Of a DNA stretch of 64,000 bases, positions 71-62,723 are shown in pieces (positions within the stretch are counted from its first letter, which is position 1; each line of letters opens with the position of its first letter). The translations under genes and the position numbers were made by a program. The DNA is taken from NCBI GenBank assembly GCA_964247055.1, contig OZ176056.1:8122001-8186000 (forward strand). Reading direction: 5' to 3'. Origin of the DNA: Paragordius varius. Its lineage: Eukaryota; Animalia; Nematomorpha. The notes below the pieces were generated by a model, which saw nothing but the letters and a program-made list of their open reading frames with translations, made no database searches and was not told where the DNA came from.

Positions 71-252
71 GTATGGTATAATTATTTTTTCAGTATTATT
101 CAAATTTAAAACAAAATTTTATTATATATAAAATGTAAAAAAAATATAGGTAATATATCCTAAAAAACCCACAATTTATTTTAGGGAGAATTTGAATTGT
201 TCGAGGGTGAATTTGAATTGTTCAAGGGTGAATTTGAAGTTTAAATGGTATA
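71..252. mobile_element. Family A MITE (TATA-CCATTT termini, 21-bp subterminal repeats), left part interrupted by the hAT end
   Basis: Family A internal sequence followed by GGGTGAATTTGAATTGTTCAA repeats and AAATGG-TATA end. Confidence 0.75.
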
Positions 253-451
253 TTATACAATCGATTATAGTTTTTATCTAATAATGGCCGAAATAGGGTT
301 TTTGAGCCATCTATGACTTTTACCATCAGGTTTATTAGGGGAAAATAAAAATCTACCGTTTTGTTAATGAAAATATAATAATTGTAAAATATATTATATA
401 AAATATTTAACCTTTTAATTTTAAACCGTAAATGATTATTGATTTGATTAG

Positions 452-22200: not shown

Positions 22201-25200
22201 CTCATACAATGTATATTTTATTTTATAAAAGCTAAAAGATAATGATATATTTTTTCTAAAAGAAAAGCATCATTTCAAATTAAACTAACTCGTCATTTTG
22301 GCTTGCTAAATGAGGAAACGAGAGATGTAAATTAGTAATATACTCAATTATGAAATTTAAATTGATAATTTTATAATTTACGTAGACAATAATTAAGATA
22401 TAAAAAAGTATGGTTATCTTTCAAAAATAATATTTGTCTTACTATATTAATTTTGAAGTTAAAGTGATTATGTTTGTTAAGAAATTTTAGATAGAGTATT
22501 TTTATAAACGGTAATGTGACCAGAAATTTTTAATTTGGACGCAGTATAAAATTAAAACATACTTTGCCTGTTTTTACACAATCGGTGTGTAAAATATCCT
22601 AATGAAATATATATGATAGGAAAATATCAGGATTATCATGGCGCTTTTAACCTTTACGAGTTATTAAAAAAAATTATTTACACTTTTGTGGTGGGTGCTC
22701 CGTATAAAATTTTAAAAGGTGCGCAATTTTTTTATATATATTTTTTGGTGAAAGCTGAGTGCTTTATTTCAAAAAATATCACTAAAATATATAAACCATA
22801 TATAAAAAGCAAAACTATATTAAAATTTTTTAAATTGTTGGATGTAAGCTCTGAAAGTCCCAAATTTTTTGGCTTTTTTATGATGGACTGTTCTCTCAAA
22901 GCAAAAATTCCGACATTGTGCAATAATTTTAAATATAAGCTAAATTTTGATATCTATATTTTAAGAAAAATGCATACTTTAAATATATTAAGCGTACTTC
23001 ATACTATTTTCAGCATGATGGAAACGATATAAACGGTTTAAGACTTTATATACATATTTCGATAATGCTATACGTTTTCCTCACTCATAAAAATTCACCA
23101 AAATATGCAAGAAAGCAAATCTTTAAATTACATATAGTAATGTTCAACATCATCATTATTTAGAAAAAGGGTTTAATTATATATTATAGCGTTACACCGT
23201 TTCCATAATTCTTCAAAATAGTTTGAAGTACGCTTCAACTTCAAATTTGTTTATGCAAAAAATAAGAAAACTAAAAAAATTTAGGAAAAAATTAAGAAGT
23301 ATCATACCTCCCACCTAATTAGTATAGAAAACGTAAAAAACTTAATTTTTTAATACGAAAACAGGTTATTTCAAAATCATATGCCATATATATTAATTTT
23401 GAATAATATGTTACGGGAATACAATTTTCTTTATGATTTCCCAATTGATGATTTTAACAAAAAATGAACTTTCTTAACCTAATCAAACATTTATTAAACT
23501 ATCATCATTTTAATAAATATTAAATTTTGAGACCTCTTTTTGCGGAAGCCCTGAGTGAAAAAGCCTTTAGCCTGAATCATACGGTGGAGTGGGAGATTTA
23601 TAGTTTCGCCACTGCCCGAAAGGCTGCAATCCTAAGCGGTTTGACCGATCCAAAACCCAATGTGTATAATTCGAGCAGAAAATAAAATATTAACCAATTA
23701 AAAATAGGCCAATCTTAGTTTTTACCGTAAAATGAATCATTTCTTTACAAATTATGGGGTTATTTTTACAGAGGGTACTATATTAAATTCTAAAATATTT
23801 TTTTTCACATAAAAGGTAATTAATGAATATTTTTAAAAAATTAAATTTTTTCAATTTCAAAAAGCAGTACAAAAGTGGCCGCAGTACAGGCGCAGTTTTT
23901 TTTTGAAAACCCAGTACTGTACTGCGAAAAACAGCCTATCTGGTCACATTAATAAACGGTTAAAAGTCATGATTGCATTAGTAGCTGGTCAAATCCAACC
24001 CCAACATAATTCCCAAAGGCACATCGACGAAATTAAATAATAACGATTTATAAGCCGCCGTTTTTATGGAATTTTGTTTGACGCCGGAAGATCTAAAAAT
24101 TTAAATATTATCAAATAAAAGAACCACCACGGATAATTTAAAAAAATAAACTTAATAAACCTTTCTCTGAGCAAATTAAAATATTAAGTAGATATTCGAT
24201 AGCTATAGTTCCTATATGTGTAAAAAAGTGTTATTAAAATAAATATTTAACACCATATTTGGTATACAGAGTGGTCTTAAAAAAATAAGTTAAAAGAGTG
24301 ATTTGTTTCCCGAAATGCCTCTCACCTCTCTTTTTCCATTTTAAAATCAAACATTTTTTCAAGAAAACTCAACATTTACAATGAAAATCAACATGTTTTA
24401 TTGCTTCGCAACACTTTTTTAAGCAAACGCACCATTTTTTGATCCAATCGCAACATTTTTTCGGTTGTTTTTTCTAGGAAAATGTTCTTTTATTAGAAAA
24501 GTTGCGTTTGCTTGAAAAATTGTTGCATTTTATTGAAATAGTTGGGTTTTGAAAGATCGTTGCGTTTGATTAAAAATATTATTGCATTTGGTTGAAAATG
24601 TAATGCTTTGGACTAATATGGTATCCATTAAATTGATAAACTCATAGACTTTTGCTTGCTTGCATAACTTTGGATCAATTTAGATATAAATTTTAATTGT
24701 TAAAATAATAACATAAAAATTTAAATATTATCAATTTCGAACATGCTTCTATTATCATTTTAGAAGATGGCCATATAATTTTTTTAATTTATAACTTACT
24801 TAAAATTAAATTTATGTGCCCATTCTGCTATATACAGTAAAATGAAATTATACGGACAAATAAAAATATAAAGAATTCTTTTTTAGACCTTAATTTATCC
24901 CATAAAAATCATTTAATTATTTTATAGTTTATTTCAAATAAATTTTCGTTTATCATTCATTATCTTATGGATAAATGATTCTTACTAAAAAACCAAGATT
25001 TAATACGTAAAGTTGTCTTTCAAAAAAAATATTTGTCTATCAGGCTAAATCCGGACGAAATGAATTACGAACATGGTGACTTGACAACGGAAGATACAAC
25101 TCCACTCCTGGGAAATATCAGTAAAAAGGCCATTCATTCAAAAAATAAGTAATTTTATATTATGTTTTATTCAAAAAATACGTAATTTACACTAAACTTA

Positions 25201-29817: not shown

Positions 29818-30362
29818 CACAGATACAAATTCATTTTAGTCCTTTAAGTCAAATAGGGGTAGTCAAATACCCCAAGCCTGTTTAAAATTAAATTCTTCAA
29901 AAAATATCAAAGGAATTGAAACCATGGCAAAATTTGCACTTATATAACATTTATGAACCGAAATATACAAAAAATCATTCAAAAATACTTGATATTACTT
30001 ATTATAAGGTAAAACTTTTAAGGTAAAAATTTAGTCAACCTGGTATGTGTACATTAGCAAAATACAAAAATTATACAAAATAAAACACTTTTTCCGTTTC
30101 TATTAATTTTAGGTATGATTTGAATAAAAAATTAGTCTTAATTTTAGCTTTTAAATCATATAAAAATATTTTGAATAAATGCTGTAAAATAAAAATGGCG
30201 GTGAAATAGTTTGATATGGAATTTTTTTTAAAATTAAATTTTATTAAGGATTTTCGGCGTCTTTATATAATTTTCTGGATAGTAGAGATATATCTAAATT
30301 AGGACTGTTTCTGTCAATAGTTTTAAAATATAAAATTATATACCCCAATTTGAATCGAAGTG
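29818..30362 (+). mobile_element. Family D piggyBac-like element upstream of RPL26
   Basis: TTAA-CAC start and GAATCGAAGTG-TTAA end. Confidence 0.8.
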
Positions 30363-30965: not shown

Positions 30966-32250
30966 CACTGTGCAACAAAATATGGGGTTAATTTTATGGA
31001 CTCAATTTTCTAAATATTTTCTGATTCCTTATAGTATTGTGATCAGATTTGCGTAAAAAATTTTTTTACTTTCCCATCTCGTTTTCGAGATATGGGACTT
31101 TTTCCATATTTGGACATATCCAAAATTTTCTTGTTTGTAAATATTTTTCGCTATGTAAACGAATAATATGTGGCTTACATAAGTATTTTTACAAGAAATT
31201 ACCAATTTATCTTCAAAATAAAAAAAAAATTTACTTAAAATATCCATTACTTTTTGTTTTAGGGGGCAAAAACCCTCAAAGATTGGGTAACTTAACATTT
31301 TTTCACACAAATATTTTTTAGCAATTTATTAAATCAAAACGAACTTTATTATATGTTCTTGGATGTTGATAATGTTTGTTTAAATATAAATATCACTTTG
31401 TAATAGCTTTGTGGACTTTTATTTTTAAAAATAAATTTAATTTTTACAGCTTTTTTGTTGCTTTTTTTATGTATAAAATAATTTAATTTAGTCAGCTGTA
31501 AATACTAATTTCATTTTTTCATCTGAAATTTTTAAATTTTGACCATATATGGTGGCAGATATGTTAATTCGTTTGCTTCATTTTTAAATATTTTAAAATA
31601 ATATAAAATGGACAATGATTCTTATATAAATTTGTGATTGAATTCTGAATCGGAAAAATCGTCTGCCTTTTAGATAAGAGAAGAAAACACCTTGATACCA
31701 TCAAATACATTATATATATATATATATATATATACTTTAGGGATATGGATGATTCCCTCTTTGTCAAGAGTGCAATCTAAAGAAGCTTATTACCCTTATG
31801 AAGTTTACGATACTCGGAAATGAATTCTTTTGTAAAAAAGTTTAATCACCCATAAAATTTCAGTTGTTTAGGGAACAGGTATGCCACAGGGAAATCAAAG
31901 GAAAGCACCCTCATATACTAAATTATATTTTCAATAATTTTAACCATATATTCTTAAAAATTTTATTTGGGTTATCATCTCTTCAGTTAAATTATTTTTT
32001 GTCGTTAACGTTTCATTTAATTTAAACTATTGTCGCTTATCAACAACTCTAATCAACCTTTGTTTTTTGCTGATATATGTTTAAGCATAAATTTAAGTTA
32101 ATGATATTTTACCCCAACCTGTTGGGATCTATATTTAACTGATTTGTTTATTCCACCTAGACAATGTATGACATCGCCCAAGTATTTAAAATTATTTACC
32201 AATTCAATTTTGGCGTCTGCCACATAAAAGTAGTTTATTAATAGGTAGTT
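30966..32250. repeat. Left arm of long near-perfect inverted repeat (partner 33983-35248)
   Basis: Reverse complement of the right arm with only scattered substitutions, homopolymer and (TA)n length differences, and a divergent few tens of terminal bases. Confidence 0.95.
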
Positions 32251-32270
32251 CACCATCTCCAACCATTCAT

Positions 32271-33694
32271 ATGGATTTATTTAATATGATGGATGATACT
32301 GATTTGGAGTTTTATCAGCAAGATATAAAGGATACTAATAAATTAAGTGGCACTGAGGTGATATCCCTAATCAAAAAGTTGCATCTCTCAAAACGGTATT
32401 TTTAGAAAAAATAATAGATTTGCGCATTTTATAATTTATTTTAATTTTCTTAAGCTGAAATGCGTTAAATATATAAGTTAAATTTTGTATTTATCTTTGA
32501 ATACGCTAAACATTTTTTTAATATATTATTATATTAGGTCGACCGAACTTATGGTGAGGACTCTTAATCGAAAGAATTTAACTGACATCAATATAACCAG
32601 TTTTCGGAATAGAGGAATAAATTTCCGAAAATATTTTTCCGAAAACAGTATTTATCATGGTGTCATGATATAATTGGCTTAATGCAGGAAATGAATTATC
32701 CATATGATTCATCACAATGGGTATTATTTCTAGACGCTTCTCAGGTATATAATATTTTACATCTTTAGGAAAGTTTGAAGGCATTTTTATTGGACCGTGC
32801 CGGAGAGCACAGGCCAATATTAATAACATTCAGCCGAGTTTATAGGGAAACCTATGATAATTTTGAAAATATTTTGCAACTCCTCCGATACAACTTCCAT
32901 TATTGGCATGTAACAGGGGATTATAAAGTTTCTAAAATTCTAATATTTTTATAGGTCATGGGACTGCTTTACGGAATACAGAAAGGATTTCCTAAATTCT
33001 TTTGTCCTTTGTGTGAGTGGGACTCGCGGGACATCGATAACCATTACACAAAAAAAATTAGCCCGCCAGAACTTATGAAGTTGGGCCCAAGAATCAGACT
33101 AATTCTCCATTAATATCAGCTAACAAATTTGTTTTGCCGCCATTGCACACACTGCTTGGATTGGCCAAAACATTTTTGTGCAGTCTCGATAAAAATGGCG
33201 AAGTTTGGGCCCATTACTTCAGGAAGTTCAGGATGACGCCTGCCAAAATTAACGCCGCAGTTTTGATAGGGCCGCAGGTATTATACTTTTAATTTTAGGT
33301 TACGAATCTTTTCAATGATGTTATGTTTAAATCTAAAATGCAACCCAAAGAAAAAGCGGCATGGGTTGCATTGCGAACTTTTTCTCAAAATTTTTTGGGA
33401 AATACAAAAATAAGAACCATCTGGAATTAGGCAATCGTTTAATCGATTCTTTCAATAGGATGGGTATGTATGTTATAATACATTTGTTTTTTAAACATTT
33501 ATATTAATTTTTATCCTATAGGATGCCGCATGAGTCTAAAGCTCCATATGGTGGATTCCCATCTACATTTTTTTCCAAAAGGCTCAATTAGTGACCAAAG
33601 AGGAGAAAAGGGTCACCAGCTTTTGAAACCCTTCGAAAAAACCTATCGAAACAATATAAATTTGATTTGCGATTATATATATATGAATAAATAA
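32271..33694 (+). pseudogene. Chapaev3-type DDE transposase, N-terminally truncated, 5 introns, three -1 frameshifts and a probable TGG-to-TAG change
   Basis: Motifs KLHLSKR|STELM, QWVLFLDASQ|ESLKAFL, WHVTGDYK|VMGLLYG, FCPLCEWDSR, VLPPLHTLLG, LIGPQ|V, EKAAW, G|CRMSLKLH..SH, SDQRGEKGHQ. Introns 32396-32537, 32745-32768, 32928-32954, 33278-33298, 33464-33521. Confidence 0.85.
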
Positions 33695-33979
33695 ATTATT
33701 ATTTTATTTTTTCTACACCTAATTTACTTTATTATTCTAGATTAGATTATCCGTGTCTTAAAATTTTTTGACCAAAATATATTCTAAATATTCACTCTAA
33801 TAACTGATTATAATTAGGATTTGCATATAGTTCAATATAATATGATGAAATTATTTATTAATGGTATATTTTATTAGGCATATTCTTCAATTTTCTCTGC
33901 ACAGTCGTCCATATTGAAAGCTAATCTATTAGCTGATGTGATATACAAATTGTTGCGATTGGGTACTTTGTCATGATAA

Positions 33980-34480: not shown

Positions 34481-35248
34481 TCATCCATATCCCTAAAGTA
34501 TATATATATATATAATGTATTTGATGGTATCAAGGTGTTTTCTTCTCTTATCTAAAAGGCAGACGATTTTTCCGATTCAGAATTCAATCACAAATTTATA
34601 TAAGAATCATTGTCCATTTTATATTATTTTAAAATATTTAAAAATGAAGCAAACGAATCAACATATCTGCCACCATATATGGTCAAAATTTAAAAATTTC
34701 AGATGAAAAAATGAAATTAGTATTTACAGCTGACTAAATTAAATTTTTTTTTACATAAAAAAAGCAACAAAAAAGCTGTAAAAATTAAATTTATTTTTAA
34801 AAATAAAAGTCCACAAAGCTATTACAAAGTGATATTTATATTTAAACAAACATTATCAACATCCAAGAACATATAATAAAGTTTGTTTTGATTTAATAAA
34901 TTGATAAAAAATATTTGTGTGAAAAAATGTTAAGTTACCCAATTTTTGAGGGTTTTTGCCCCCTAAAACAAAAAGTAATGGATATTTTAAGTAAATTTTT
35001 TTTTTATTTTGAAGATAAATTGGTAATTTCTTGTAAAAATACTTATGTAAGCCACATATTATTCGTTTACATAGCGAAAAATATTTACAAACAAGAAAAT
35101 TTTGAATATGTCCAAATATGGAAAAAGTCCCATATCTCGAAAACGAGCTGGGAAAGTAAAAAAAATTTTTACGCAAATCTGATCACAATACTATAAGAAA
35201 TCAGAAAATATTTAGAAAATCGAGTCCAGAAAAAGTTGTGTCACAGTG
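33983..35248. repeat. Right arm of long inverted repeat
   Basis: See left arm; the ORF track reports mirror-image ORFs (31029/34915, 31049/34856, 31564/34515). Confidence 0.95.
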
Positions 35249-39659: not shown

Positions 39660-42600
39660 TCAAGTTTGTCTTTGTTTTTCGTCAATATTTTTTTCCGAAG
39701 GGTAAGTTTCAACAGGCAAACTAGTTATTAATTCTGTTTGCTGTTCACCCGAATCATCAGGTGTTATTAGACTCTGTTTTGGGGTGGATGGTGTTATATG
39801 TATGTCAGGAAAGGTATTTTTTGTAGCGTCACTCTGCTCACCGCTAAAACCTTCGACTGCATGATGTTCTTGATCAAGACTTTGAGTATCTTTGCCTAGG
39901 GACCATATGGGTTTATTAGTCTTGGAACCGATTTCGGGAACCGAATCGGAATGAAAAACCGGCTGAATTGGTCCGAAGGTAGCCTTTTCTAAAAAAATAT
40001 ATTTATTTAAAAGATTTAAATTTTATTCGTTTAGGGATTAGGATATACCAACTTTCAGTCAAAAACAACACTTTTTAACCAAACGCAACATTTGGATAAA
40101 AATATGTTGCATTTGCTTGAAAAAATGTTGCGTTTGGTTGAAAAGGTGTTGCTTTTCACCGAAAAATGGTATATAATTTAATATTTGATAGATGCAAAAT
40201 GCCACATAAGCGAAAACATGTGCAAACACTAAAATGCAAAGCACTTGCTCATAACTTTTTAAAATATAGATGCAAACAGCTTATTATTTATTAAAATAAT
40301 TTTAATTTTTATGTATAAGATATAAAATTAAAATATTATCTTATAAATAAATATTTAATTATCCATTTTAGATGAGATTGATGATGATGGCTAAAAATAT
40401 TTTGCTTTAGAAACGCGCCAGTTTACATAGCAAACTATTATCTATGTTTAATAAAAAAATTTATTTGATTTTTACAAATTGCATATAAAATAATTGGTTT
40501 ATAATTCCAATAACTGGTCATAAACCTCTTTTGATTTACTCTATTAATAATTAAAGCAAATTTCAAAATTTAAACAGTGTTAACAAAAAAAGGGCTGCTT
40601 AACATTTCGCGTGATTTTAATCTGCTCAGCTTTCGCGAATCAACATTTTTTGAAAGAATACTAAATTTGTATTCATACACAAAAACATTTTTAAATGATT
40701 GTAATGAAATTATATATAAATTTTATGTATGTTTTTATTCGTGAAAACTAATTTGTCAAGCACCCTAATTTATAATGAAGGACATGAATACATGATTTGT
40801 TTTAGGTTGTCTTATATAGTAGATTTAAAAATATCCATCCCATTTTTAATAATAAAAAGGGTAATGTAAAAAAGATACCTGTGGATGATTCCTCCGGCTC
40901 CTCCTCAGTTAATTTATCTAAATCGTCGAGTGATGCAAATTGATGATGCATAAGTGAATGTTTACTACCCCGTTTTGGAGAGCGCTTTTCCGCGCCCATT
41001 GCAAGGGGACTGGGTACGGGACGACCACTTTTAGATATAATTCGACTTAAGCCGAAACCCGCAGCTGGTAAACGCGAGGAAGATAAATTTTTAGAGCTTC
41101 CAAACGCTAATCCCTGTCCAGTATTCGGGCCAATGAAAGAAATGTTTGGAGATGAGGGTGCATTGTAAAGACCAGTCCCACCCGATGGATTTAGTATGCT
41201 TGATATCTTTTTGCGCATTTGCGCTGTGGAGGAGATCTTTTTTACGCGGGCATCATCTGGACGTTCTTTCCGCCCTGTTCCAGGGGATGAAGCCAGCTCT
41301 GGAGTTTGAGCGCCTGATCCATGATCAAGTCTTTGGGTACTAGCCCGACGACTTCCAACAACACGCCTGCCCCCTAAAATTGCTGAGGTGCGTCGAATCC
41401 CTGCTGCAGTGTCTCCTTGACTACCCCTTGGTTGTAACATAGGTCTAGAGATTGAAAAAAAAAACCAAAACATTTGTATTATACCATTTTTCATGCAAAA
41501 ACATCATTTTTTCAAGCAAACGCACCATTTTTTCAAGCAAACGCAACATTTTTTCAAGCAAAGGCAACAATTTTTCAAGCAAATGCAACATTTTTTCAAG
41601 CAAAGACAACATTTTTTCAAGCAAACGCAACATTTTTTCAAGCAAACGCAACATTTTTTCAACCAAATACAACATTTTTTCATCCAAACGCAACATTTTT
41701 TCAACCAAAGACAACATTTTTTCAAGCAAAAACAACACTTTTTTTTAATATTACAATGAATTATTATTTATTGGTAATTATAAATTATTTATTAAATTTT
41801 AAGTAAATGTAATTTATTTTTAGCGTTGAATTATGATTTTTATCGTTTTATCATCAATATTTGATGGTAAAATTGATTTTCAAACATTTTGAATTTGCCC
41901 ATAAATTGCATTATTTATTTATATTAATTATATTTTTCTTTTACAATTTTGGTTTCGCCTAATCAAATTATTTAATTTGCACTTCAAGAGTGTCTTTAAA
42001 AGTTTAAAGTTGTCCTTCAATTCAAGTTAATCCTTTGACTTTTTTGTTTTGTTTTTAACTTTTATTAATTAAATCGAAATAATTTATCTATTTTATTGTT
42101 TTTAACCTATTTTCTATTATTTAACATAAATTTTAAATGATATCATCTTTTAATCTTTGAGAAACCGTATATTAATTTCTTAAAATAATTTTAGATATTT
42201 ATAACACGAAAAAAAATATATGAGTTTTCTGGGTTATTAAAAAATTTTCATTAAAAACATTAAAAGTTAATAATTTTGTTCAATTAAAAAAATATTTTGA
42301 AACAAAAAAGTGGTTTTTCAATAAAAAATTTTATTTTTAAATGGATAAATATATAATAAATAAAGAAAATTAGGTTAATAAATAATAATATATATTAAAA
42401 AATAAATGCAAAAATTAGGGTAAAACAAAATTTATATATTTTAAGGACCAACTTAAAGAGTTCAAGGACCAACTGGAAATGTTCAAATACCAACTTGAAG
42501 TGATCAAGGACACTGTTGAAGTGCAAATTAAATAATTTGATTAGGCGAAACCAAAATTGTAAAAGAAAAATATAATTAATATAAATAAATAATGCAATTT

Positions 42601-45600
42601 ATGGGCAAATTCAAAATGTTTGAAAATCAATTTTACCATCAAATATTGATGATAAAACGATAAAAACCATAATTCAACGCTAAAAATAAATTACATTTAC
42701 TTAAAATTTAATAAATAATTTATAATTAACAATAAATAGTAATTCTTTGTAATATTAAAAAAAGTGTTGTTTTTGCTTGAAAAAATGTTGTCTTTGGTTG
42801 AAAAAATGTTGCGTTTGGATGAAAAAATGTTGTATTTGGTTGAAAAAATGTTGCCTTTGCTTGAAAAAATGTTGCGTTTGCTTGAAAAAATGGTGCGTTT
42901 GCTTGAAAAAATGATGTTTTTGCATGAAAAATGGTATATGAATTTAAAACAATGATTATCATTCGCGTTAAAATAATATAATTTCTACTCAATTTCAGAT
43001 ATAGATTCCATCCCTCGGGCCTCTGAGGAGGGCCTTCTCATTTTCTTTTTGGACATAGGCAAATATCTAAAAAATAGAAGTTTGAGTTATATATATCCAA
43101 ATAAATTTATACTTTCAAACTAATTCTTTTTAAAGGAAAAGTAAAAAATTAACCTATTTATTGAATATGGAGATAAGAATTTGTTTATGCCAGATTCATA
43201 ATCTAAAATCGGGGCATCTTCAGGTATGGGCTCTAGGTTTTGTCCTATCGCCATATCTTCAGGGTCTAAACTGAAATGTAAGATAATTATTTTGCTAATA
43301 CCCAATTGACAAATTATTAAAGAATGTGCCATAAAATTTTTAGTAACACTTGTTTTTAACTAATTTAGCATTAAGTCTAATTTTCGAAAATACTAAATAT
43401 AACGTTTAAAACCTTGAAGCAATTTTACGGCATATAAACTCTAACTCACTAAACATTTACAATTTATCCAGGTGCGAGAATAAAATTTTTAGTTTATACT
43501 TTAATTTTTTTATGTTTGACAAAAATTATTTCTACCAATAATAATATCAATTTAAAATTCATTTAATTACTGAATTATAATTCCAATATTAAGAAAACTT
43601 ATCTTCGTACAAAAATATATCAATGATGAGACTAATTGGAAGTCATATTATTGATCCCTGGTAACAGTTGTAGTCAATACCCCTGACTTTTTTGACATAA
43701 AATATTTAAAAATTATAAGGAATGAAAAAAGCAATTTTGAATAATGCATATTTAAGGCTAACTTGAAGACAAAACAACTTAAATATATGCATGAGCTAAT
43801 TGCAAAAAAGTGCGAAATACATCTACGTTATGAAGTCAAATGCTGCGAAAAAGTCTAATATGGTGTTCTTTCAAAGTGATACCATATATTTATTAAATAA
43901 ACTAACATGTGTTAAATTTTTACGATCTATATTTTCAATTAACTACCCGAATTCGTAACTACGCGTAGGAGATTATATTAAATTTTGGGGAAAAATAAAA
44001 TAAATGAAAAAAATATGAATATATAATTGCATACGCCAGGTTTGCTGTGGAGCCCATCCAAGTGTTCTTCTTATATTCTTGCGACGCAGCCGTATAAGGT
44101 AAATCGGGTTGATTTTGATCCCAATATTTGTCTTTGGTTAAAGTCGGGACCATATTATGCATTCCGTCTACAGCTAGTAGGGAAACTTGCAAATTCCTAT
44201 CAATAATCCAATTGATATCAAAATCATCCTCATCTTCTCCAAATGGGTTGAGCAATTCTTCAGCAACCTAATATATACCAGTTCAAATTTACCCTCGAAC
44301 AATTCAAATTCGCCCTCGAACAATTCAAATTCACCCTAAAAATAAATTATGTGTTTTCGAACTAATATAATTCATTATTAATATAAAATATATGTTTATG
44401 GTATAGTTTATTATTTTTTCAGTATTATTTAGATATAAAATAGAAAAATTATTTTCAAAAATATATAATATAAATTTTTAATCTTAAAAAACATATATTT
44501 TATTTGAGGGTGAATTTGAATTATAAGGTTGTAAATGGTAAATTGTGAAATTTTATGTTTCATGATAAAAGTATTCAGTTGCCAGTTATTTTCTGCTTAG
44601 ATTGAAAAAATAGAAAATTAGATTTAGGGATATGTAGGGTTTTTACCAAATGATAGAAAATAATTACTTTGAACCATCCCATGTAAAAAAAGAATTGAAG
44701 AAATGTAAAGATAGGAAAGTATATATCCTCATGGTTAGGATAACGCTTTTGACCATCAAGCAATTGACGTCCCATTAAAGACGCAAAGAAAAATGTATAA
44801 TTTGCTAGGGTAACTACCTAGTATGTTGGATAAAATTAGAAAATTATTATATTTTCCGTAAAAATTGAAATTATATGAACGGATGAGTAAAAAGTAAAAG
44901 ACAAATATTTTTAACAACCACGCCTTTTCAAAACTTGATTTTTTTCTACTTAAAATAAAAAATGCAGTTTCAGAGCATATGATAAAGCAGTGATACTCAA
45001 ACCGCGGCCCGCGGGCCGCATGCGGCCCTAAGAGTGCTTTAAAATTGCCCTATGACCATATTGATACTAAAATTATTTTTTTTATTGATGAAATCTTAAA
45101 ATACACATTATCGGATTTTCGCTTATTTCAATATTAATTTATTTTATTTAGATTTAATTTGATAATTTTTATTTTTACCCAATTTGAAATGTAGAAAAAT
45201 TTCCCTACATTAAAATAATTTCAAAATTTTGGAACACGTGGTTTTTGTTTCTGCATTCTATTTTCTTTTCTATTTTGAAATTACTGCATTCCTTTTTTGT
45301 ATTTAAGCAATCCTTTCACCCAAACTTGCATATACTTATTCTTTCATTCTATCCTGCATAATTTTATATAACTCACATCATTAAATTTTAATCTGTTTTT
45401 TATTGCATAATCATTTTTTTGAAGATATTTACATAATATTTAAACATAAATTCAAAGGATGACATTTAATGCTGAAAAACGTAAATTATCCGATGAAAAT
45501 CGCTCCGTTTAAAAAGAGAATGGTAAGAAAATTTTTTTGTCGTTTTAAATAAAAATGTCACCTGGCTTATATGTAAGGACACATAATTAAAATACAATAT

Positions 45601-48600
45601 TGAAAGACATTTTACAATCCAGCATTCTCACAAACCAGAAAATCATGAGGAAAAAAACGAAAAATGTTAAAAGATTAAGGAATTACACCAGAAAGAAAAA
45701 TCTATTATGTCCATAGCTAGCAGGAAAAAGCTGTAACATTAGCTTCGTATGGAATTTGCTATATTTTAGGAAAAAATATGAAACCGTTTACTGATTGCCA
45801 ATTAATAAAAGAATGTCTAATAAATGGTTGCACTTTTTTATTTAATAAATACATGGTAAAGATCAAATCATGACTTAAACTTTCTGATTCTACATGTGCT
45901 CGACGCATTATCTAAATATATTTATTGGCTCTGAAAAACTGCAAATATTTTAGTATTGCTATTGATTCTAGCACTGATATTAGTCAGCTCCTCAGTGTGC
46001 GCTCTTATGAGATTTTGCAACGACAACATAATCAACGAGGAATATTTATTATTTTTACCAATATATAATACCACGAAAGAGAGTTATTTTCTCGAATAAT
46101 TAGCCTTTTTTCGATAATAATGGTATATCTATGAGAAAATTGGTTTCGATCTGCACAGATGGCTGTCCCTCTATGATTGGAAACAAAGGATTTATTCCTC
46201 TTTTGAAAAACAAATATAAAATATTTGATCATTTAACTGCTTTACTCATAAGCAAAACCTGGTTTCGAGTGTAAAAGATGAATGCTAAATTCAGTAATTT
46301 AAAACGGTTGTGGATATAGTGAACCACAGGGGCAGAGTGTACCGCCGTAAATTCAAAAACCTTCTGAAAGATATCCACAGTGAGTTTGATGATATTCTTT
46401 TGTATACCACTGTAAGATGGTTAAGCCTTAGCAAAGTATTAAATAGATTTTTTCTTTTAAAACATGATATTATTTATAAAGGATAACAGAAAATTTGACA
46501 AGGAAATTAATAGTGACAAATGGTGGGTTTTATAGCCCACCTTTGTGACATTACTTATAAACTTAGTATTTTAAATACAAGTCAAGGGAGCAAAATAATA
46601 ACCCAATATGCTAATTGAGATTAAATTAATCATAGACAATTATTTAATTTTATATGATGAGATGAAATTCAGAGTTCAGGAATAAAGAAATATTAAAAAT
46701 TGCTTAAAATATTGAAAATCCCTGGCATATGGATCTATCCAATATTAAGCAACATGAGCATTTCGGTTTTGATCAGGTGCTATCATTGAAAAATTCGTAG
46801 ATTTTAAAAATGATTCCAATATGGAGGCTATATTCAAGGAGAATCGTGAGTAGAAATATATGTAGAGTTTTTATGCCAAATAAATATGAAAATATAAAAA
46901 AATGTGTCAAGTTATCCTAACTGTTTTTCCCTACCCTTACACATTTGAGACGGCATATTCAAAGATGAAGTATGTCAAGAATACATACAGAAATCACTTA
47001 ACCGATGATTATATGGACGACGTATTAATATTGGCCTATCATGAGGAGAAACCAAATTTGCCAAAAATTATTGGTTAATATCAAAATAAATGTTGTTATT
47101 AAAATATTTTAATTTTTTAAACTAAATGGTGAAAAACGAGTTTTTAGCTGGATTACATCCGCAAAAAAAATCATTGTGCTGATTTAAAGTATAAATATGT
47201 GCAAATAGCTATGGGATATTTGCCATTATAAAGTTCATGGCCCTCGAAAAAAAAATATATTTAATTTGGCCAGTCAAATTTTTTTGGTGAGTACCACTGT
47301 GATAAAGTGTATGACTATTTAAATTTTTTTCTTCTCAATCCAAAATGGTAAATTATTTTTAACGTTTCAAAGTTTAAAAAGAATGGGGTTGTCTTTAATA
47401 AAAATATTTTTCTAGTTTTGTCATTGGTATGTATAATATAATTTTTATTATATAAATTTACGGTTAGATATTGCCAATTACCTGAGTATATACTAAAGGT
47501 ATTGAGATCCAATCATAGGCATACAGACTCCCACAAGAGTCCCTAAACCGGGCCAAAATCTATATGGTACAATAATGATGAATATAAACTATTTCAACGT
47601 TTTTATTATACTAAAAATGATATAATATATATAAGCAAATATAGTAACTATGATGTTAAACACTAAATAAGGTACGATAACTGTATTCATCGACTATGCG
47701 ACGTTCCTTATAAGCTTTTAGGAGTAGATTTGAGCACCAAAGGCATGGGACCCACCATTTTGAGTGTGGACTCGGTAGTTCATCCCATAATTTAAGTTCT
47801 TCCTCGGTGATGAAACCTTAAACATATTTTTATCAAAAGGATAATATGTAAAATATTTTTGAATTTTATCTTTTGGATAAATCGCTGATAAAACTTATTG
47901 TCGAATCCTGTGGTTTTGTGTCCCTAATGCTCATTATATTATCGATAGTAATAAATTTTTAAATGATATTACTTAATCAATTTTATTTTTTTATTTATTT
48001 CATGAAAGAGTTATTATATTTAGGAAAAAAATAATTTTACCAGCATCAACTAAATGTTCCATGGTTGGGAATCGTTTTTTAACGGGTTTACTGATTGCCC
48101 GATAAACTAAAACAGCGCTAAGGTTGAGATATCGAATTATTGTTCGTCTTATCATTCGACCATGCTCATCATTACCTATAATCATTGCACTAACGGCTAA
48201 TCCCGCTCTATAGTAGTCATTTTTTTATATATATACATTTTAAAAATTTTTTAGATTAAATTTATTTAAAATTATCATCTATCATATATACACTTTAGCC
48301 AACAATTATAGATAATTGGTCAGAAACGCAAAAAGTTGCAGCAATAATACCGCTAAAATGTATAACGCAAAAGCAATTAAATATAAATTAAATTATGCCG
48401 TTATTTAAATAAACGTGCCAACTAAATGTACGCAAATGAAGTTTAAAATAAAGTTTATCAACATAAATTTGAAATGAATATTAATTATTATAAAGGGCAA
48501 TTACGTATCAGGCCATGGGACACATTGAAATTGTTCCCACCATCGGGTTACAACGGTTGAAACGAAAAATCCCAAAACAAAAGACAGGGGTATGAGGTTA

Positions 48601-56661: not shown

Positions 56662-57657
56662 TATGAAAGAAAGAAAGATTTTCCAAACCCTATAAAAGAC
56701 TAAATCCGAAAATTTACAAAACAAAAGACGGTAAAAGTATATGGCATATTATTTAATAATATAAATTCCTATTTTCTATACATATCATCACTAAGATTTT
56801 TTAGGGAAATCCGTTTGAGAAAGAAACGATATTATATTCGTCAATTGACAATTTTAAAAAATTATAAAATAGAGAGACCGTTTTTCTAAAGCGCTTAAAA
56901 TCTATATAATCGACTCTCGTTTTTATGAATAGAGTTTAAAGATTGCATTAGTTAAATTAAATTTTAGGACTAGATACTATTAATGGAAAATTTTTTTGAT
57001 TAAAGTGTTACTTTGAAAATGAAATATTTTACCAAAACTTAACATTTTTTCATAAACACGCAAAATTTGTCAGAGCGCAACTATTATCTATTAAAAATAC
57101 ATTTCAATCAAAATCAACATTATTTAATATACCTACTCTTCATTATTAGAACATTTTAAACGTCCAATAAACATTTATCTTAAATCTTTAATTTAATTTT
57201 TTTTGTTTTTATTTTTTAATCAAATAATTAATCATATTCGAAGTGTATATAGCCATTAGGGAAATTAAAATATTAATATATATAAAAAATTCAATAACTA
57301 AAGAGTCAATATTTTTGGATATTTTTAAATATATAATACCTAAAACTTAATTAATAATATATGATAAGTATTGAGTTAAAATGGGAAGTCCTGAGTTTGG
57401 TTTTTGATTAAAAACATTGTTTGATTAAAGAGTGTTAAGGGTATTAATTATTTTCAGATATATTTTTATACTAAGTGGGTTTATATGTTTAAATGATAAT
57501 ATATTTTTATAGTTTACAAAAAAAATATTAGTTTTGCAAACTTTTATTTCATTTGATAAATATAATTAAATTATTAGTAACTAACCACCCATAATTATAC
57601 AATAACACAAATGTGGCTATTAAAATAAAATATCAGCACATTTTTTTTATCATTAAG

Positions 57658-60600
57658 TTATGATCGCGGTCCAAAGATTAATGATCCAATACGAACATAA
57701 GTTGCACCCATTTCGATCTAAAACGATTTATGAACAAAAAAAATAAATTCAAAAATGTAAAATTGTCTTCAAAAAAAGTAAAAATAATTTTGCTAAACAA
57801 TTTAAAATATAGCATTTTTTTGCAGAGTGGAAAATGCTCTCGCTTTTGCAGTATTAGCTTTTAAAGACTTTCAGAAATAATGGAATTCTCTAAATTATTT
57901 AAATAAAAAGGATGTTATGCTTGTTAATTTCAACCCTTAATGTGTGACAAAAAAAAACGAAATCAACCTGTTTTTCGGGTTTAACTAATGAATGTATTAA
58001 ACATTATAAAGAGCTAAATTTAGGCAATTATTTTTGCATTTTCTTAAACAAAGGCAAACAGTTTTAATTTTTTCCATGGTATTGTAGAGTTTTTAAAACT
58101 AAATTTCTCCCCTATATTGTAAACTATTGTTGTATGTTTTTGTTTAATTATTTGATTGAAAAAAAACACACTTTGTGATTCCGGCCAATAATTTTGTGAT
58201 TCCGACCAATAATGAAAACCATTTACAAAAAACTTTTCAGCGTAAAATATATGTATTTTAAAAAAAAATTACTGCATGTTGATAATCGTGAGACATACCC
58301 ATACTTAACTCAATCTCATCCATTGGAATGGATAGCTTAGTGTGGATTACATTTCGACATTCAATCATTTTCTATGCATCATTGCATATAATAATATTTT
58401 ATATTAATGGCATTAAAGGATTGCAAAAAGAATTAATCAATATGATATAATTTTTGGAAAAATATCATAAGGACCATAATTTACAACAGTATTGATATTT
58501 AAAAAAAAGTATATATATATATATACAGTAATAATTGAATTTTTACGGATGATGTAAACAGATAAAGACAAATATTTTTGAATTAAAGACAAACATACTT
58601 TTTAAACTTTGTTTTTTTAGATAAAATATTTAATTATGGCTGGAAAATGTGTTAATAATATACATCTCTATTTCATGCTTTCAAATTTAGAACAATAAGT
58701 TAATAAAAATTTAAGATTTAAATGTATGGTTGTTTTAATAAAGTTTGTCCAAAAATTTTAATTTTTGTCCGTATAATTTCAAAACTATTACTGTATTTTC
58801 TCAAAAATCATTAAATATTACGACGTATTTGTCTCGTTCAAAAAGACATCCAACCATATAGTTTAAAATCTATTTTATTTTTCCTATATATATTAATTGG
58901 AATAGTAAAAATAATTGATTATGTATCACAAATTCATTTACAACTCTATTACATTACTTTGCAATTTAAATGACTTATATTTAATTAGATATATTAAGTA
59001 TATAATTATACTATAAATTTTTTGAAAAAAAACGCTTGTCTCTATATTTTTACGGGTTTGTCAGTATAATTTCAATTTTAATTGAATTATATAAGTAGAC
59101 AAATTCCAAATACCATGAACTATTTTTGATATGATGAGTTCTAAAAAATAAACTTGGAAATCAGGATTAGGATTATGGAGTGTATATGTGGTCAAACTAT
59201 TTTCTTGCGAGCCAATAGTCATAAAACCTCGTAAATGCAATAAATGACATTTTTCACGTATTTTCCGGTAAATTTCAAAACTATCCTCGGACCGAATACC
59301 CCCTTTATCTAAGTAGTTAGTATTTTTGTTTTAAAAATGTTGAAAAAAATAAACTTTGAAGCCATAAACACAATTTATAATATAAAGAGGAAAAAAACGT
59401 AAGATAACACAAATATTTTTTACGCAAATACAATTATACTCATTTAATCCCTTTTATAATATATAATAATCTAAATCAGGCATGGGGTGTTTAACATATA
59501 TGTAGCCTGCGATCATATACAATACGAGATCATTTAACAACTTATTTTCGCCTGAATAAGTCTTATTGTTTTGGCAATGAATTAGCGAAAATTGTTTGTT
59601 AAAACAATAACAGTGGTTTTTGCAGTCTAATGCCGAAATTTAATAACTTTTAAATTAATTAAGGCCCATATATTTTGTAAATAACGAAACTATATCGCAT
59701 ATTTCGATAGACCCCCGCCATAATTTAAAGAAGAATTAAGCTTTTATAAACAGTATGGCTGGCTATCTTTGTAAAAAAAATATTTGCCTTTTAAGTATTA
59801 CGTTTAATCTTTATGCCTATAAAGTTTTACTGCATGCAATTTCGTTTTACAAAAATTATACAAGTGATTAACTATTTTCCTGACTCGTATTAATTTGCAA
59901 AAGAATGTTTAATCGTTTATCTCCCACAAAACATTTCGCCGCCCATGCATCATTAAGTTTTTCGGCAAGTTCAAAAGAGTCCACAGTATGAATCATGTAT
60001 AAATTGGGAATTTCTAAAAAAAATTAATAATTTTTTAATATGAAACATCTTTCATGTGGATAACAAAATTATTATTGATATAAAATTAACTTCCATGAAA
60101 TATATGTTAGATTTGATTAGTATATAAAACTCATATGTTCAAATATATGCCAAAAACAACATAGCATAATATGATTATTAAGTAAGTAATGAAAACAATG
60201 ATATATCTAAAAATATTTGGTAATCATTTATGTCCCAAGCATATAAGATACAAATCATAAAGAACATCCATTTAAAAGAATATTACACGGTATAAGCTAT
60301 TCACATTTAATCAAATGTCCCTCATTCAGATACGGCAAAATTTATCTTTTCACTCAATTTTTATGACAGTCTGACCATCCAAGTGAAATAGATGTTGAAA
60401 CTAAGGAGTAAAAGTTTAGTTTATCAAGTAATTTATATGTCTTGTGTGTATAGTCTGATTTATAATTATAAGGAGAAATCCTAAAAACTGAAGATTTTGT
60501 TAACAACTTGGCAGCTCTAGGACTTTAAAATAAAGTTTTACAATAAATTCGATATATGGTGTCTAAGTCGAGAGATAGTTATACCTTTTAAAACATGTGA

Positions 60601-61544
60601 AACAAATTTTGCAAAGTAGATATTGTGCAGAACATTCAAACCTTGTGTTTGTTGTTAGTAATGGAAGATTTTTACGTTTTCTCAGTTATTAATAAAAATA
60701 ATTGTAAGTATTAAACATAAAGGTCAAAATAAAAACCGTTATGCGGTCGTTGGTGTGTGTGTATAGAATGAAATTACAGGAGCGCTGTTAAAATATCAAA
60801 ATAAACCAATTTAAAGCGGTTTTTGAATTAATGGCTCAAATTTTGAATGCATTTTTCTAGGCTTATGTACATAATTTTTGAGAATGTTCGTCAGCCTAAG
60901 ATTGAGTAATTCGTCAAAAATTAAAATGAGTATTGGTAAATCATAAATGGAAAAATAATAACTTCCAAAAGGAAGTAACTATTTATTGATCAATATATCA
61001 ATTTAAAATTATCTGCTTCGTAAGGTTGTTCTGAAGCATGGAAAAAGTGGGTGAGAATATAAATCGCGGTCATTAAATAAAGTTAATAAACTTCTAAGAC
61101 CGTTTTCTGGGCCATATTGTAAAGAAGTTTACACATAATGATATAACAATTTTAACAATTAAAAATTTTTAAAATAATATATTCAATATTAAATATATTA
61201 CGCAACAATTTGTTGATTTTGTTCTTTTGCAAATGTCCAATAAAATGCCATTTAATATCCGGACAATCTTTTAAAATCTTAATATTTTAAAATATACTTC
61301 GTTATTTTTTGCTTTTGTTTCTAATTCTTGTACCTACAATTATTAAAAATTTAACATAATTTTCGCCAAAATCACGTTGGCCAAATTGATAAGCCAAAAT
61401 TATATCATGTATTGGCTTTAGTTTAGATACAGCTATTAATGTTGGGCTCTAAATATTAAAATAATAGACTTTATGAGATGTGAATTTGGAGATATTATAT
61501 AAAATTTCTTGCAAATTTTTTTGAATATTTTTTGAAATATTCAT
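57658..61544 (-). CDS. PLPBP: Pyridoxal phosphate homeostasis protein (PLPBP/PROSC, YggS family), 8 exons, 244 aa
   Basis: Exons 61544-61470, 61448-61356, 61333-61298, 61277-61202, 60013-59873, 59308-59154, 58371-58273, 57717-57658 sum to 735 nt. Motifs LIAVSKLKP (PLP lysine), FGENY|[57 protein letters not shown]. Introns 21, 22, 20, 1188, 564, 782, 555 nt. Confidence 0.93.
58524..58795. mobile_element. Family B MITE in PLPBP intron 6
   Basis: TA-CAGTAATAATTGAA...TTACTG-TA. Confidence 0.75.
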
Positions 61545-61580
61545 TGGTGAAATTATGGTTGCCAGATGATCAAATATTTG

Positions 61581-62723
61581 CCTATCGATTCAAATTGGGG
61601 TATCTAAATACCCCAGACTAAATTAAAGGTAAGATTTTTAAATAACCACTGAAGGAAACGGTCCCATTTTAAATTTATACTTCTATCCTAATCAAAATTA
61701 TATAAATATGCCAAAATATCTAAATAAAATTTCGTTTTGAAAAAAAAGTCCCATGTCAAACGACTTCGACGCCATTTTTATTCGCAATATTTTTGCAAAA
61801 TATCCTCTTAACACTTGGATACAACACACTCATTTTAGTCCTTCGATTCAAATTGGGGTAGTTTGATACCCCAGGCCTGTTTAAAATAAAATACTTTAAA
61901 AATTATGGAAGGAATCGAAACCATGGCAAAATTTTGCACTTAAATAACATTAATAAACCGAAATATATAAAATTATTCAAAAATACTTGATATAACTTAT
62001 TTTGAGCTAAAACCGAAAGGTAAAAATTTCGTCAACGTGACATGTGTCAAATTTTAAAATTAAAAAATAATACAAAATAAACCTCTTTTTCTATTTCTAT
62101 CAATGTAAGATGTAATTTATATAAAAAATTAGCCTCAATTTTAATCTTAAAATTAAATGAAAACGATATTTTGCAAAAATTTTGTAAAATAAAAATGGCG
62201 TCGAAGTAGTTCGAGATGGAACTTTTTTTTCAAAACAAAATTTTATCAAGATATTTTGGCATATTTATATAATATTTATCAGGATAGAAGCATAAATTTA
62301 AATTGGGACCATTTCCTTCAGTAGTTTTTTAAAAATTTTAATTTAAATTTAGTCTGGTGTATTTAGATACCCCAATTTGAATCGAAGTGTTAATTTTAAG
62401 AGTATAATTAAAGCAAATTTTTAATTTTAATTATATCTAACATTGATAGATAAAAAGTGGTTTATTATGTATTATTCTTCAATTTTATCGTTGCACACAT
62501 ATCACGTTGACTAAATTTTTACCTTTAGGTTTTACTTAAAATATAGGAAATCAAGTATTGCTGAATAATTTTTTATATATTTCGTTTATTAATGCTATAT
62601 AAGTGCAACATTTTGCCATGGTCTTGATACCTTCCATATTTTTCAAAGAATTTAAATTTTAACTGTGGTCCAACTACCCCATTTTGAATTAAAAGACTAA
62701 AATAAATGTGTTGTATCCAAGTG
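61581..62723 (-). mobile_element. Family D element (reverse orientation) interrupted by a second family D copy
   Basis: Two halves (61581-61811 and 62390-62723) rejoin into one reverse-oriented copy; ends ...GTATCCAAGTG-TTAA. Confidence 0.8.
61812..62389 (+). mobile_element. Family D piggyBac-like element, complete, nested
   Basis: TTAA at 61808-61811 and 62390-62393; closely matches the 26840-27411 copy. Confidence 0.88.

What the first reader, a model, noticed from the sequence alone, without database searches (positions are those of the whole stretch)
61278..61469. Three consecutive 20-22-nt spliceosomal introns in a conserved animal gene (PLPBP)
Seen: GTCTATTATTTTAATATTTAG (21 nt, 61469-61449, in-frame TAG), GTTAAATTTTTAATAATTGTAG (22 nt, 61355-61334) and GTATATTTTAAAATATTAAG (20 nt, 61297-61278). 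The last two would frameshift if retained. Removing them gives an uninterrupted PLPBP with ENY|VQE and exon sizes 36 and 76 nt that match my recollection of the human gene, so at least those introns look ancestral and shrunken rather than new. Typical animal introns need about 40-70 nt or more; 20-30-nt introns are known mainly from ciliates, nucleomorphs and dicyemids. Standard stop-codon usage and vertebrate-like intron positions indicate an animal. This points to a modified splicing machinery and to systematic under-annotation of this genome by gene finders with minimum-intron limits.
Basis: partly seen in the sequence, partly recalled or inferred. Interest (0 to 1): 0.9.

Follow-up and report, generated by a model that had tools for sequence, protein, structure and literature searches.

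The report
Three 20-22-base introns in PLPBP
A conserved vitamin-B6 housekeeping gene (PLPBP) in this AT-rich animal genome is interrupted near its start by three introns of only 21, 22 and 20 bases, at positions where other animals have ordinary introns. They are among the shortest animal introns known, but no RNA was available to show that they are spliced.

Summary

- **Gene model.** Removing these three segments and four longer GT..AG introns (1188, 564, 782 and 555 nt) gives an 8-exon, 244-codon reading frame with no internal stop.
- **Homology.** The product aligns end to end with animal PLPBPs at about 50% identity, with no gap at junctions 2, 3 or 4.
- **Intron positions.** A vertebrate-like PLPBP contig has introns at the same codons and phases.
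- **Relatives.** Brachionus calyciflorus shares introns 4-7 but lacks 1-3. Adineta vaga has no introns in this gene.
- **Assembly.** An independent run reproduces the micro-intron region base for base, so assembly collapse is unlikely.

RNA evidence could not be obtained: the one RNA run laid on the gene holds no transcript of it. Splicing therefore rests on comparison with other species.

The claim of a modified spliceosome is untested, and published work on other short-intron animals suggests it is not needed.

Novelty is moderate. Introns under 30 bp are already described in myxobolid myxozoans and in Dicyema. Clustered 5' microintrons of 32-37 bp are described in flatworms. This organism appears to be neither; a single-gene tree places it beside rotifers.

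First readers of this scan also noted micro-introns in at least seven other windows of this genome. Those notes are unchecked.

The parts
61470..61544 (-). PLPBP exon 1 (75 nt, ATG at 61544-61542; N-terminal helix)
   Evidence: It aligns with the N-terminal helix of Haliotis, Apostichopus and Brachionus PLPBPs. On its own it finds nothing in the PDB sequences.
61449..61469 (-). Micro-intron 1, 21 nt, phase 0, GTC..TAG; its own 3' TAG is an in-frame stop
   Evidence: The junction lies in a linker of variable length, so position conservation can only be judged to within about 5 codons.
61356..61448 (-). PLPBP exon 2 (93 nt; carries AVSK, the PLP-binding lysine motif, and FGENY)
   Evidence: Matches yeast YBL036C residues 43-70 at E 8e-5.
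61334..61355 (-). Micro-intron 2, 22 nt, phase 0, GTT..TAG, between FGENY and VQEL
   Evidence: The alignment is gapless across the junction. A vertebrate-like contig, L002, has an intron at the same codon and phase.
61298..61333 (-). PLPBP exon 3 (36 nt, [12 protein letters not shown])
   Evidence: The orthologous exon in L002 is also 36 nt.
61278..61297 (-). Micro-intron 3, 20 nt, phase 0, GTA..AAG
   Evidence: The alignment is gapless across the junction. L002 has an intron at the same position and phase.
61202..61277 (-). PLPBP exon 4 (76 nt, [14 protein letters not shown] motif), ends in phase 1
   Evidence: Matches PLPBP chains in the PDB at E 5.5e-4. The L002 exon is also 76 nt.
60014..61201 (-). 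Intron 4, 1188 nt, phase 1, GTAATA..TTTTTTTTAG
   Evidence: Same position and phase in L002 and in Brachionus calyciflorus, where it is 62 nt.
59873..60013 (-). PLPBP exon 5 (141 nt)
   Evidence: Matches yeast YBL036C residues 104-147. It found 41 hits among 1.8 billion representative proteins.
59309..59872 (-). Intron 5, 564 nt, phase 1, with TACTAAC ending 7 nt before the 3' AG
   Evidence: Same position in B. calyciflorus, where it is 64 nt.
59154..59308 (-). PLPBP exon 6 (155 nt)
58372..59153 (-). Intron 6, 782 nt, phase 0
   Evidence: Same position in B. calyciflorus, where it is 59 nt.
58273..58371 (-). PLPBP exon 7 (99 nt, ELSMGMS motif)
57718..58272 (-). Intron 7, 555 nt, phase 0
   Evidence: Same position in B. 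calyciflorus, where it is 509 nt.
57658..57717 (-). PLPBP exon 8 (57 nt plus a TAA stop; VRIGSLIFG motif)

Best explanation
The three segments are genuine GT-AG (U2-type) spliceosomal introns of an intact, functional PLPBP gene. Introns 2 and 3 demonstrably sit at ancestral intron positions, and intron 1 probably does. All three have been whittled down to 20-22 nt, close to the smallest size at which a 5' splice site, a branch adenosine and a 3' AG still fit.

The proposed way of working is inferred, not shown:
- Each intron is recognised as a unit ('intron definition').
- The 5' signal is weak (GTC, GTT or GTA followed by A/T).
- There is no polypyrimidine tract.
- The branch A lies in a T-rich TTTTAAT or TTAAAAT motif, 12-13 nt from the 5' G and 7-9 nt from the 3' G.
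- Any retained copy creates a premature stop, so unspliced mRNA would be non-productive.

The same gene also carries four introns of 0.55-1.2 kb with more ordinary 3' ends, one with a perfect TACTAAC. Two very different intron sizes are therefore handled within one transcript, with the tiny ones clustered at the 5' end.
For: - **Reading frame.** Exact GT..AG bounds on all seven introns, and a 735-nt, 244-codon frame with no internal stop once they are removed.
- **Similarity.** 116 of 217 residues are identical to sperm-whale PLPBP, with no gap at junctions 2, 3 and 4. Alignments over residues 1-244 with mollusc and echinoderm PLPBPs reach E about 1e-80.
- **Junction gaps.** Of 66 homologues aligned from residue 5 or earlier, only 2 have a gap within 2 residues of junction 2, and only 1 of junction 3.
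- **Order along the protein.** The pieces match yeast YBL036C in order: residues 43-70, 83-100 and 104-147.
- **Intron positions.** The vertebrate-like contig L002 has introns with GTGAGT, GTAGGT and GTAAGT donors at the same codons and phases, leaving 36- and 76-nt exons.
- **Shared long introns.** Brachionus calyciflorus shares introns 4-7 in position and phase.
- **Effect of retention.** Keeping any one micro-intron gives a stop at codon 32, 74 or 77.
- **Chance.** The probability of GT..AG bounds on three segments is about 3.5e-9.
- **Sequence reproduced.** Other runs give the same DNA.
- **Composition.** The micro-introns have 10-14% G+C, against 17-38% in the exons.
Against: - No transcript evidence. 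RNA runs with the same species label hold none of the gene's sampled words. The one RNA run laid on the gene gave only two spurious partial matches under 90% alike.
- Exon 1 has no detectable similarity on its own. Junction 1 falls in a linker of variable length, and 20 of 66 homologue alignments have a gap there. Intron 1 therefore rests on weaker evidence than introns 2 and 3.
- An ORF-only census of GT..AG segments of 18-30 nt across the window shows no excess over decoy dinucleotide pairs. This window alone does not demonstrate a class.
- Other genes in the window have ordinary first introns at their 5' ends: 48 nt in RPL26 and roughly 90 nt in ArfGAP.
Confidence: 0.85

Rival explanations
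1. The segments are true introns but are spliced inefficiently or in a regulated way. Much of the transcript would then keep them and be degraded or left untranslated, as reported for very short microsporidian introns.
For: All three retention products contain early stops. The 5' splice-site signals are weak. PMC13644364 cites a median splicing efficiency of about 25% for very short microsporidian introns.
Against: The gene is otherwise intact and conserved over its full length, so a productive mRNA must be made. No RNA data bear on efficiency.
Confidence: 0.07
2. The segments are removed at the DNA level, as IES-like programmed elimination in somatic nuclei, and not by RNA splicing.
For: Their size (20-22 nt) and A+T richness resemble ciliate internal eliminated sequences. 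No RNA data exclude this.
Against: Their ends are GT..AG, not TA..TA. Introns 2 and 3 lie exactly at ancestral spliceosomal intron positions and phases. Contigs from five runs all contain the segments, and no joined form was seen.
Confidence: 0.03
3. The locus is a decaying pseudogene with three small insertions.
For: Read literally, the genomic sequence is interrupted by one stop and two frameshifts. No expression was detected in the available RNA run.
Against: The remaining 244 codons are open and about 50% identical to PLPBPs over the full length, with the AVSK, FGENY, SMGMS and VRIG motifs intact. Random insertions would not all start with GT, end with AG, and fall on ancestral intron positions.
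Confidence: 0.03
4. The tiny sizes are an assembly or polishing artefact: longer introns were collapsed, or indel errors were introduced.
For: None was found.
Against: Four runs of the same organism label hold 100% of the sampled 31-mers of 61200-61545. Contigs of a run from another study match 61077-61295 and 61272-61553 with no differences and no gaps.
Confidence: 0.02

Closest known systems
Ultra-short (<30 bp) introns of myxobolid myxozoans and of Dicyema japonicum (PMC13644364; PMC6736024)
   Same: These are animal GT-AG introns of 20-27 bp. They occupy conserved positions between conserved exons. Their splice-site motifs are reduced to about 'GTa' and 'AG'. A few A residues lie upstream of the AG, and there is no polypyrimidine tract. 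Short introns tend to neighbour other short introns.
   Different: In those lineages the whole intron population is short (median 22-27 bp; mean 38 bp in Dicyema). Here, four of the seven introns in the same gene are 555-1188 nt. Window G+C is 25.8%, against 36.7% in D. japonicum and 29.1% in H. salminicola. The PLPBP tree places this organism beside rotifers, not cnidarians. No dicyemid or flatworm sequence was in the tree.
Flatworm 'microintrons' (Opisthorchis felineus and other flukes, tapeworms, Gyrodactylus; PMC6530080, PMC4040987)
   Same: A discrete short-intron class coexists with kilobase introns. The microintrons lie next to one another in clusters and sit preferentially at the 5' end of genes. 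They are missed by gene finders with a high minimum intron length.
   Different: Published modes are about 32-37 bp, with a second mode at about 58 or 90 bp. The introns here are 20-22 nt. Nothing tested here indicates a flatworm.
Tiny introns of ciliates and nucleomorphs (Paramecium about 25 nt, Stentor 15-16 nt; PMC8997360, PMC5014332, as cited in PMC13644364)
   Same: The length range is similar, and retention produces a premature stop.
   Different: Those organisms have only tiny introns. Paramecium also reads TAA and TAG as sense codons. Here the code is standard and the genes are of animal type (bestrophin, haspin, PLPBP with animal intron positions).

Membership tests
U2-type GT-AG spliceosomal intron | GT at the 5' end and AG at the 3' end | tested here: met
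   All three micro-introns and all four long introns.
U2-type GT-AG spliceosomal intron | Removal restores a continuous reading frame that is collinear with homologues | tested here: met
   244-codon frame. Alignment is gapless at junctions 2-4. Full-length alignments.
U2-type GT-AG spliceosomal intron | Position and phase shared with orthologous introns in other lineages | tested here: met
   Introns 2, 3 and 4 match the vertebrate-like contig L002. Introns 4-7 match B. calyciflorus. Intron 1 matches only approximately.
U2-type GT-AG spliceosomal intron | Absent from mature mRNA; lariat formed at a branch adenosine | not testable with these tools
   No RNA contig of this gene in run X8. The RNA runs hold 0.00 of the sampled words.
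Animal ultra-short-intron genomes (myxobolid / dicyemid type) | Individual introns shorter than 30 bp at conserved positions | tested here: met
   21, 22 and 20 nt; positions.
Animal ultra-short-intron genomes (myxobolid / dicyemid type) | The bulk of the genome's introns are short (median under 30 bp) | tested here: not met
   Within this gene four of seven introns are 555-1188 nt. RPL26 intron 1 is 48 nt. A genome-wide median could not be measured.
Flatworm-type microintrons | Short introns adjacent to one another, at the 5' end of the gene, coexisting with long introns | tested here: met
   Introns 1-3 are micro and introns 4-7 are long.
Flatworm-type microintrons | Length mode of about 32-37 bp, in Platyhelminthes | tested here: not met
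   The lengths here are 20-22 nt. The PLPBP tree groups the protein with rotifers at 97/93 support, but it is a single gene on a long branch, and no flatworm was in the tree.
U12-type (minor) intron | Highly conserved /RTATCCTT 5' splice site and TCCTTAAC branch site | tested here: not met
   The 5' ends read GTCTAT, GTTAAA and GTATAT, and there is no TCCTTAAC.
PLPBP / YggS (Pfam PF01168 fold) | Full-length similarity to named PLPBPs, including the AVSK lysine motif | tested here: met
   blastp E about 1e-80 against named PLPBPs that carry PF01168. PDB hits to YBL036C, YggS and PipY.

The most novel reading that the evidence does not exclude
This genome belongs to a third animal lineage, independent of myxozoans and dicyemids and possibly a gnathiferan related to rotifers. 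In it, a discrete class of 20-25-nt introns has evolved and coexists with kilobase introns in the same transcripts, preferentially at the 5' ends of genes. One spliceosome would then routinely handle two size regimes, and the lower limit for animal introns would be about 20 nt even in a genome rich in repeats and not compacted.
Probability: 0.45. Interest if true: 0.75.

Novelty: new member of a known kind. Interest (0 to 1): 0.6.

Why it matters
Until recently, introns under about 30 nt were regarded as absent from animals. A September 2026 survey of 51 animal genomes (PMC13644364) found them only in myxobolid myxozoans and one dicyemid, and linked them to parasitic genome reduction.

This case shows 20-22-nt introns at ancestral positions in a gene that also keeps introns of 0.5-1.2 kb, in a repeat-rich genome with 26% G+C. 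Extreme shortening is therefore not simply a by-product of global compaction. It also suggests that intron size is set locally, here at the 5' end of the gene.

There is a practical point as well. Gene finders and RNA aligners with minimum-intron settings of 30-60 nt would break or truncate such genes. PLPBP would lose its first 93 codons, including the PLP-binding lysine.

Tried and rejected
1. **RNA test.** Both sequencing-run searches and the single read-laying run gave no transcript of this gene. The decisive test could not be run.
2. **Window-wide census.** I looked for frame-rescuing GT..AG segments of 18-30 nt. The length distribution was flat. There was no excess over 63 decoy dinucleotide pairs: 30 against a mean of 35.6, and 7 against 4.0 with stricter flanks. 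ORF criteria alone cannot detect micro-introns in this largely non-coding, AT-rich window.
3. **Short exons alone.** Exon 3 (in a 20-aa query of which 12 residues are exon) and exon 1, searched alone against PDB sequences, were uninformative.
4. **Transposase-like gene.** Pfam on pieces of the gene at 32.2-33.7 kb, which has three candidate micro-introns of 24, 27 and 21 nt, gave no hits. Those candidates rest only on 43-72-codon open flanks.
5. **A false candidate.** A 20-nt candidate at 4294-4313 upstream of the haspin exon was rejected, because its flank is a translated repeat.
6. **Flatworm idea.** This was prompted by earlier notes on micro-exon genes. It found no support, although no flatworm was in the tree.
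7. **Dicyema japonicum.** Rejected on G+C content: 36.7% against 25.8%.
8. **Identifying the organism.** Rfam found nothing in the window. The Atlas search, cluster look-ups and three protein searches found no relative closer than about 54% identity.
9. **Profile alignment.** An alignment of all exon pieces to a scaffold protein misplaced three pieces. It was replaced by a five-piece version.

Full report
**Observation.**
Each begins with GT and ends with AG. The window has 25.8% G+C. GT and AG each occur at about 4% of positions. The chance that three arbitrary segments all carry both bounds is about 3.5e-9.

**Gene model.**
I followed the reading frame downstream. The gene has eight exons: 61544-61470, 61448-61356, 61333-61298, 61277-61202, 60013-59873, 59308-59154, 58371-58273 and 57717-57658. 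Their lengths are 75, 93, 36, 76, 141, 155, 99 and 60 nt. Joined, they give 735 nt, or 244 codons, with no internal stop and a terminal TAA.

The seven introns are 21, 22, 20, 1188, 564, 782 and 555 nt, all GT..AG. Three micro-introns therefore sit together at the 5' end, and four long introns follow. Intron 5 has a perfect TACTAAC that ends 7 nt before its 3' AG. Retaining any one micro-intron gives a stop at codon 32, 74 or 77.

**Homology across the junctions.**
Single exons match solved YggS/PLPBP proteins in the right order. Exon 2 matches yeast YBL036C residues 43-70. Exon 4 matches residues 83-100. Exon 5 matches residues 104-147.

An exhaustive search with exon 5 returned a full-length PLPBP, P0028, later named as sperm whale. 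The spliced protein aligns to it over residues 27-243 with 116 of 217 identities. There is no gap at FGENY|VQEL, KNNE|ILKD or KLL(Q)|IPNL.

With more homologues, alignments cover residues 1-244 at E about 1e-80. Exon 1 aligns with the N-terminal helix of mollusc, echinoderm and rotifer PLPBPs. Of 66 homologues aligned from residue 5 or earlier, 2 have a gap within two residues of junction 2 and 1 of junction 3. Twenty have one at junction 1, which lies in a linker of variable length. Introns 2 and 3 are therefore very well supported, and intron 1 somewhat less.

**Are the positions ancestral?**
One hit, P0016, was a read-through ORF from a genomic contig, which I fetched as L002. In L002 the PLPBP coding sequence is interrupted in three places:
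- after FGENY, in phase 0, with a GTGAGT donor;
- 36 nt later, in phase 0, with a GTAGGT donor;
- 76 nt after that, in phase 1, with a GTAAGT donor.

These are the same codons, phases and exon sizes as here. The first intron of L002 lies about five codons from ours by naive alignment, inside the variable linker.

In Brachionus calyciflorus (L003) the annotated gene has four introns of 62, 64, 59 and 509 nt, at the positions and phases of our introns 4-7. It has none at positions 1-3. Adineta vaga has no introns in this gene. A beetle contig reads straight through positions 2-4 (and the P0027 sequence). The micro-introns are therefore old introns that have been shortened here and lost in some other lineages.

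**Is the DNA right?**
Four runs with the window's organism label hold all sampled 31-mers of 61200-61545. In a run from another study (X5), contigs match 61077-61295 and 61272-61553 without a single difference or gap. Collapse of longer introns is therefore unlikely.

**RNA.**
The RNA runs with the same species label hold none of the gene's words. The largest of them was read in full and placed only two unrelated partial matches on the gene. The decisive test could not be done, and splicing is inferred from comparative evidence.

**Is there a class in this window?**
A purely ORF-based census of GT..AG segments found many candidates, but no excess over decoy dinucleotide pairs. It cannot show a class here. 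The transposase-like gene at 32.2-33.7 kb has three candidates: 32745-32768, 32928-32954 and 33278-33298, of 24, 27 and 21 nt. Each has 43-72 open codons on either side, but no Pfam support.

Other genes in the window have ordinary first introns: 48 nt in RPL26, with a clear pyrimidine tract, and roughly 90 nt in an ArfGAP gene. First readers of this scan reported micro-introns of 21-31 nt in at least seven other windows of the same genome, several of them at gene 5' ends. Those notes are unverified leads, not evidence.

**Likely mechanism (inferred).**
The three introns have 10-14% G+C and weak 5' sites (GTCTAT, GTTAAA, GTATAT). They have no pyrimidine tract. They share a T-rich motif with A residues: TTTTAAT, TTTTTAAT and TTTTAAAAT. 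This puts a candidate branch A 12-13 nt from the 5' G and 7-9 nt from the 3' G (sequence). It is the same picture that PMC13644364 describes for myxobolid and dicyemid short introns. That paper found canonical U2 snRNA and U2AF there, so a modified spliceosome is not required, and I could not test it.

**Who is it?**
Animal-type genes are present: two bestrophins, haspin, RPL26, ArfGAP and PLPBP. No PLPBP closer than about 54% identity was found in the searches of the 5.8-billion-protein collection.

A maximum-likelihood tree of 31 PLPBPs places the window's protein beside monogonont and bdelloid rotifers with 97/93 support. It also has the longest terminal branch (0.98, against a median of 0.4). 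No flatworm, dicyemid, nematode or myxozoan was included, so this is a lead only.

The 25.8% G+C resembles monogonont rotifers (24.2-26.4%) more than Pomphorhynchus (32.9%; PMC7310846), Dicyema (36.7%; PMC6736024) or Henneguya (29.1%; PMC13644364). Runs labelled as three other organisms contain low-depth pieces identical to this locus. That would fit an organism living in or on other sampled organisms, or very close relatives.

**Comparison with what is known.**
PMC13644364 (September 2026) reports introns under 30 bp in animals only in myxobolids (median 22-27 bp) and Dicyema, among 51 genomes surveyed. Flatworms have clustered, 5'-biased microintrons with modes of 32-37 bp alongside long introns (PMC6530080, PMC4040987). 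The present case combines the length of the first kind with the architecture of the second, in what appears to be a different lineage. I found no report of such introns in rotifers or acanthocephalans.

**Verdict.**
The intron interpretation is well supported by comparison with other species but lacks RNA proof. The 'ancestral and shrunken' reading is supported for introns 2 and 3. The 'modified machinery' claim is untested. I rate it a new member of a known kind, of moderate-to-high interest.

Noticed in passing
window 61558-62000, and about 29840-29880: A repeat with a short palindromic core (GGGGTA..TACCCC followed by AATTTGAATCGA) occurs twice just upstream of PLPBP. A related copy lies upstream of RPL26. 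In the runs labelled as other organisms, this stretch has contig depth of 1,000-27,000, against about 3-5 for the unique flanks. It is therefore a very high-copy, MITE-like element.
   Followed up: partly
window 183-3375, 17949-19781, 44282-44337: There are 21-bp tandem arrays (unit AGGGTGAATTTGAATTGTTCA) at 12 or more places, often beside bestrophin exons. In one register the unit starts with GT and ends with AG, so it mimics micro-introns in pattern scans. It probably represents the subterminal repeats of a foldback or MITE family.
   Followed up: partly
window 57400-62000, as seen in runs X5, X6 and X7: Runs labelled as three other organisms, from three other studies, contain low-depth contigs identical to unique parts of this locus, including intronic DNA. 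Either these are very close relatives, or this organism is present in those samples.
   Followed up: no
L003 (Brachionus calyciflorus) and L004 (Adineta vaga): The Brachionus PLPBP gene keeps exactly the four introns that are long here (62, 64, 59 and 509 nt) and lacks the three that are micro here. Adineta has none. This hints that micro-introns may be a stage on the way to intron loss.
   Followed up: yes
window 32190-33700 (+), with inverted copies at 31029-31321 and 34856-35196: A transposase-like gene (CxxC..WDSR..PPLH motif) has three candidate 24-, 27- and 21-nt GT..AG introns and a frame change near 33060-33110. It is flanked by long inverted duplicates. It has no Pfam match.
   Followed up: partly
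window 16300-22240 (+) and 48650-43960 (-): Two bestrophin paralogues lie on opposite strands. Their mapped introns are of ordinary length (about 70-500 nt and longer), including the 5' intron mapped in the first gene. A hAT-like transposase ORF lies inside the second gene, at about 45900-47100 (+).
   Followed up: partly
window 40805-41503 (-), with arrays at 41487-41744 and 42759-42931: A 233-codon open frame with 44% G+C sits in a 26% G+C region. It encodes a Ser/Gly/Pro/Arg-rich product with no Pfam hit. It is directly adjacent to two 21-bp tandem arrays that are open in several frames.
   Followed up: no
window 59309-59335: Long intron 5 of PLPBP carries a perfect yeast-type branch-site heptamer, TACTAAC, ending 7 nt before its 3' AG. 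The micro-introns have only TTAAT-like motifs.
   Followed up: no
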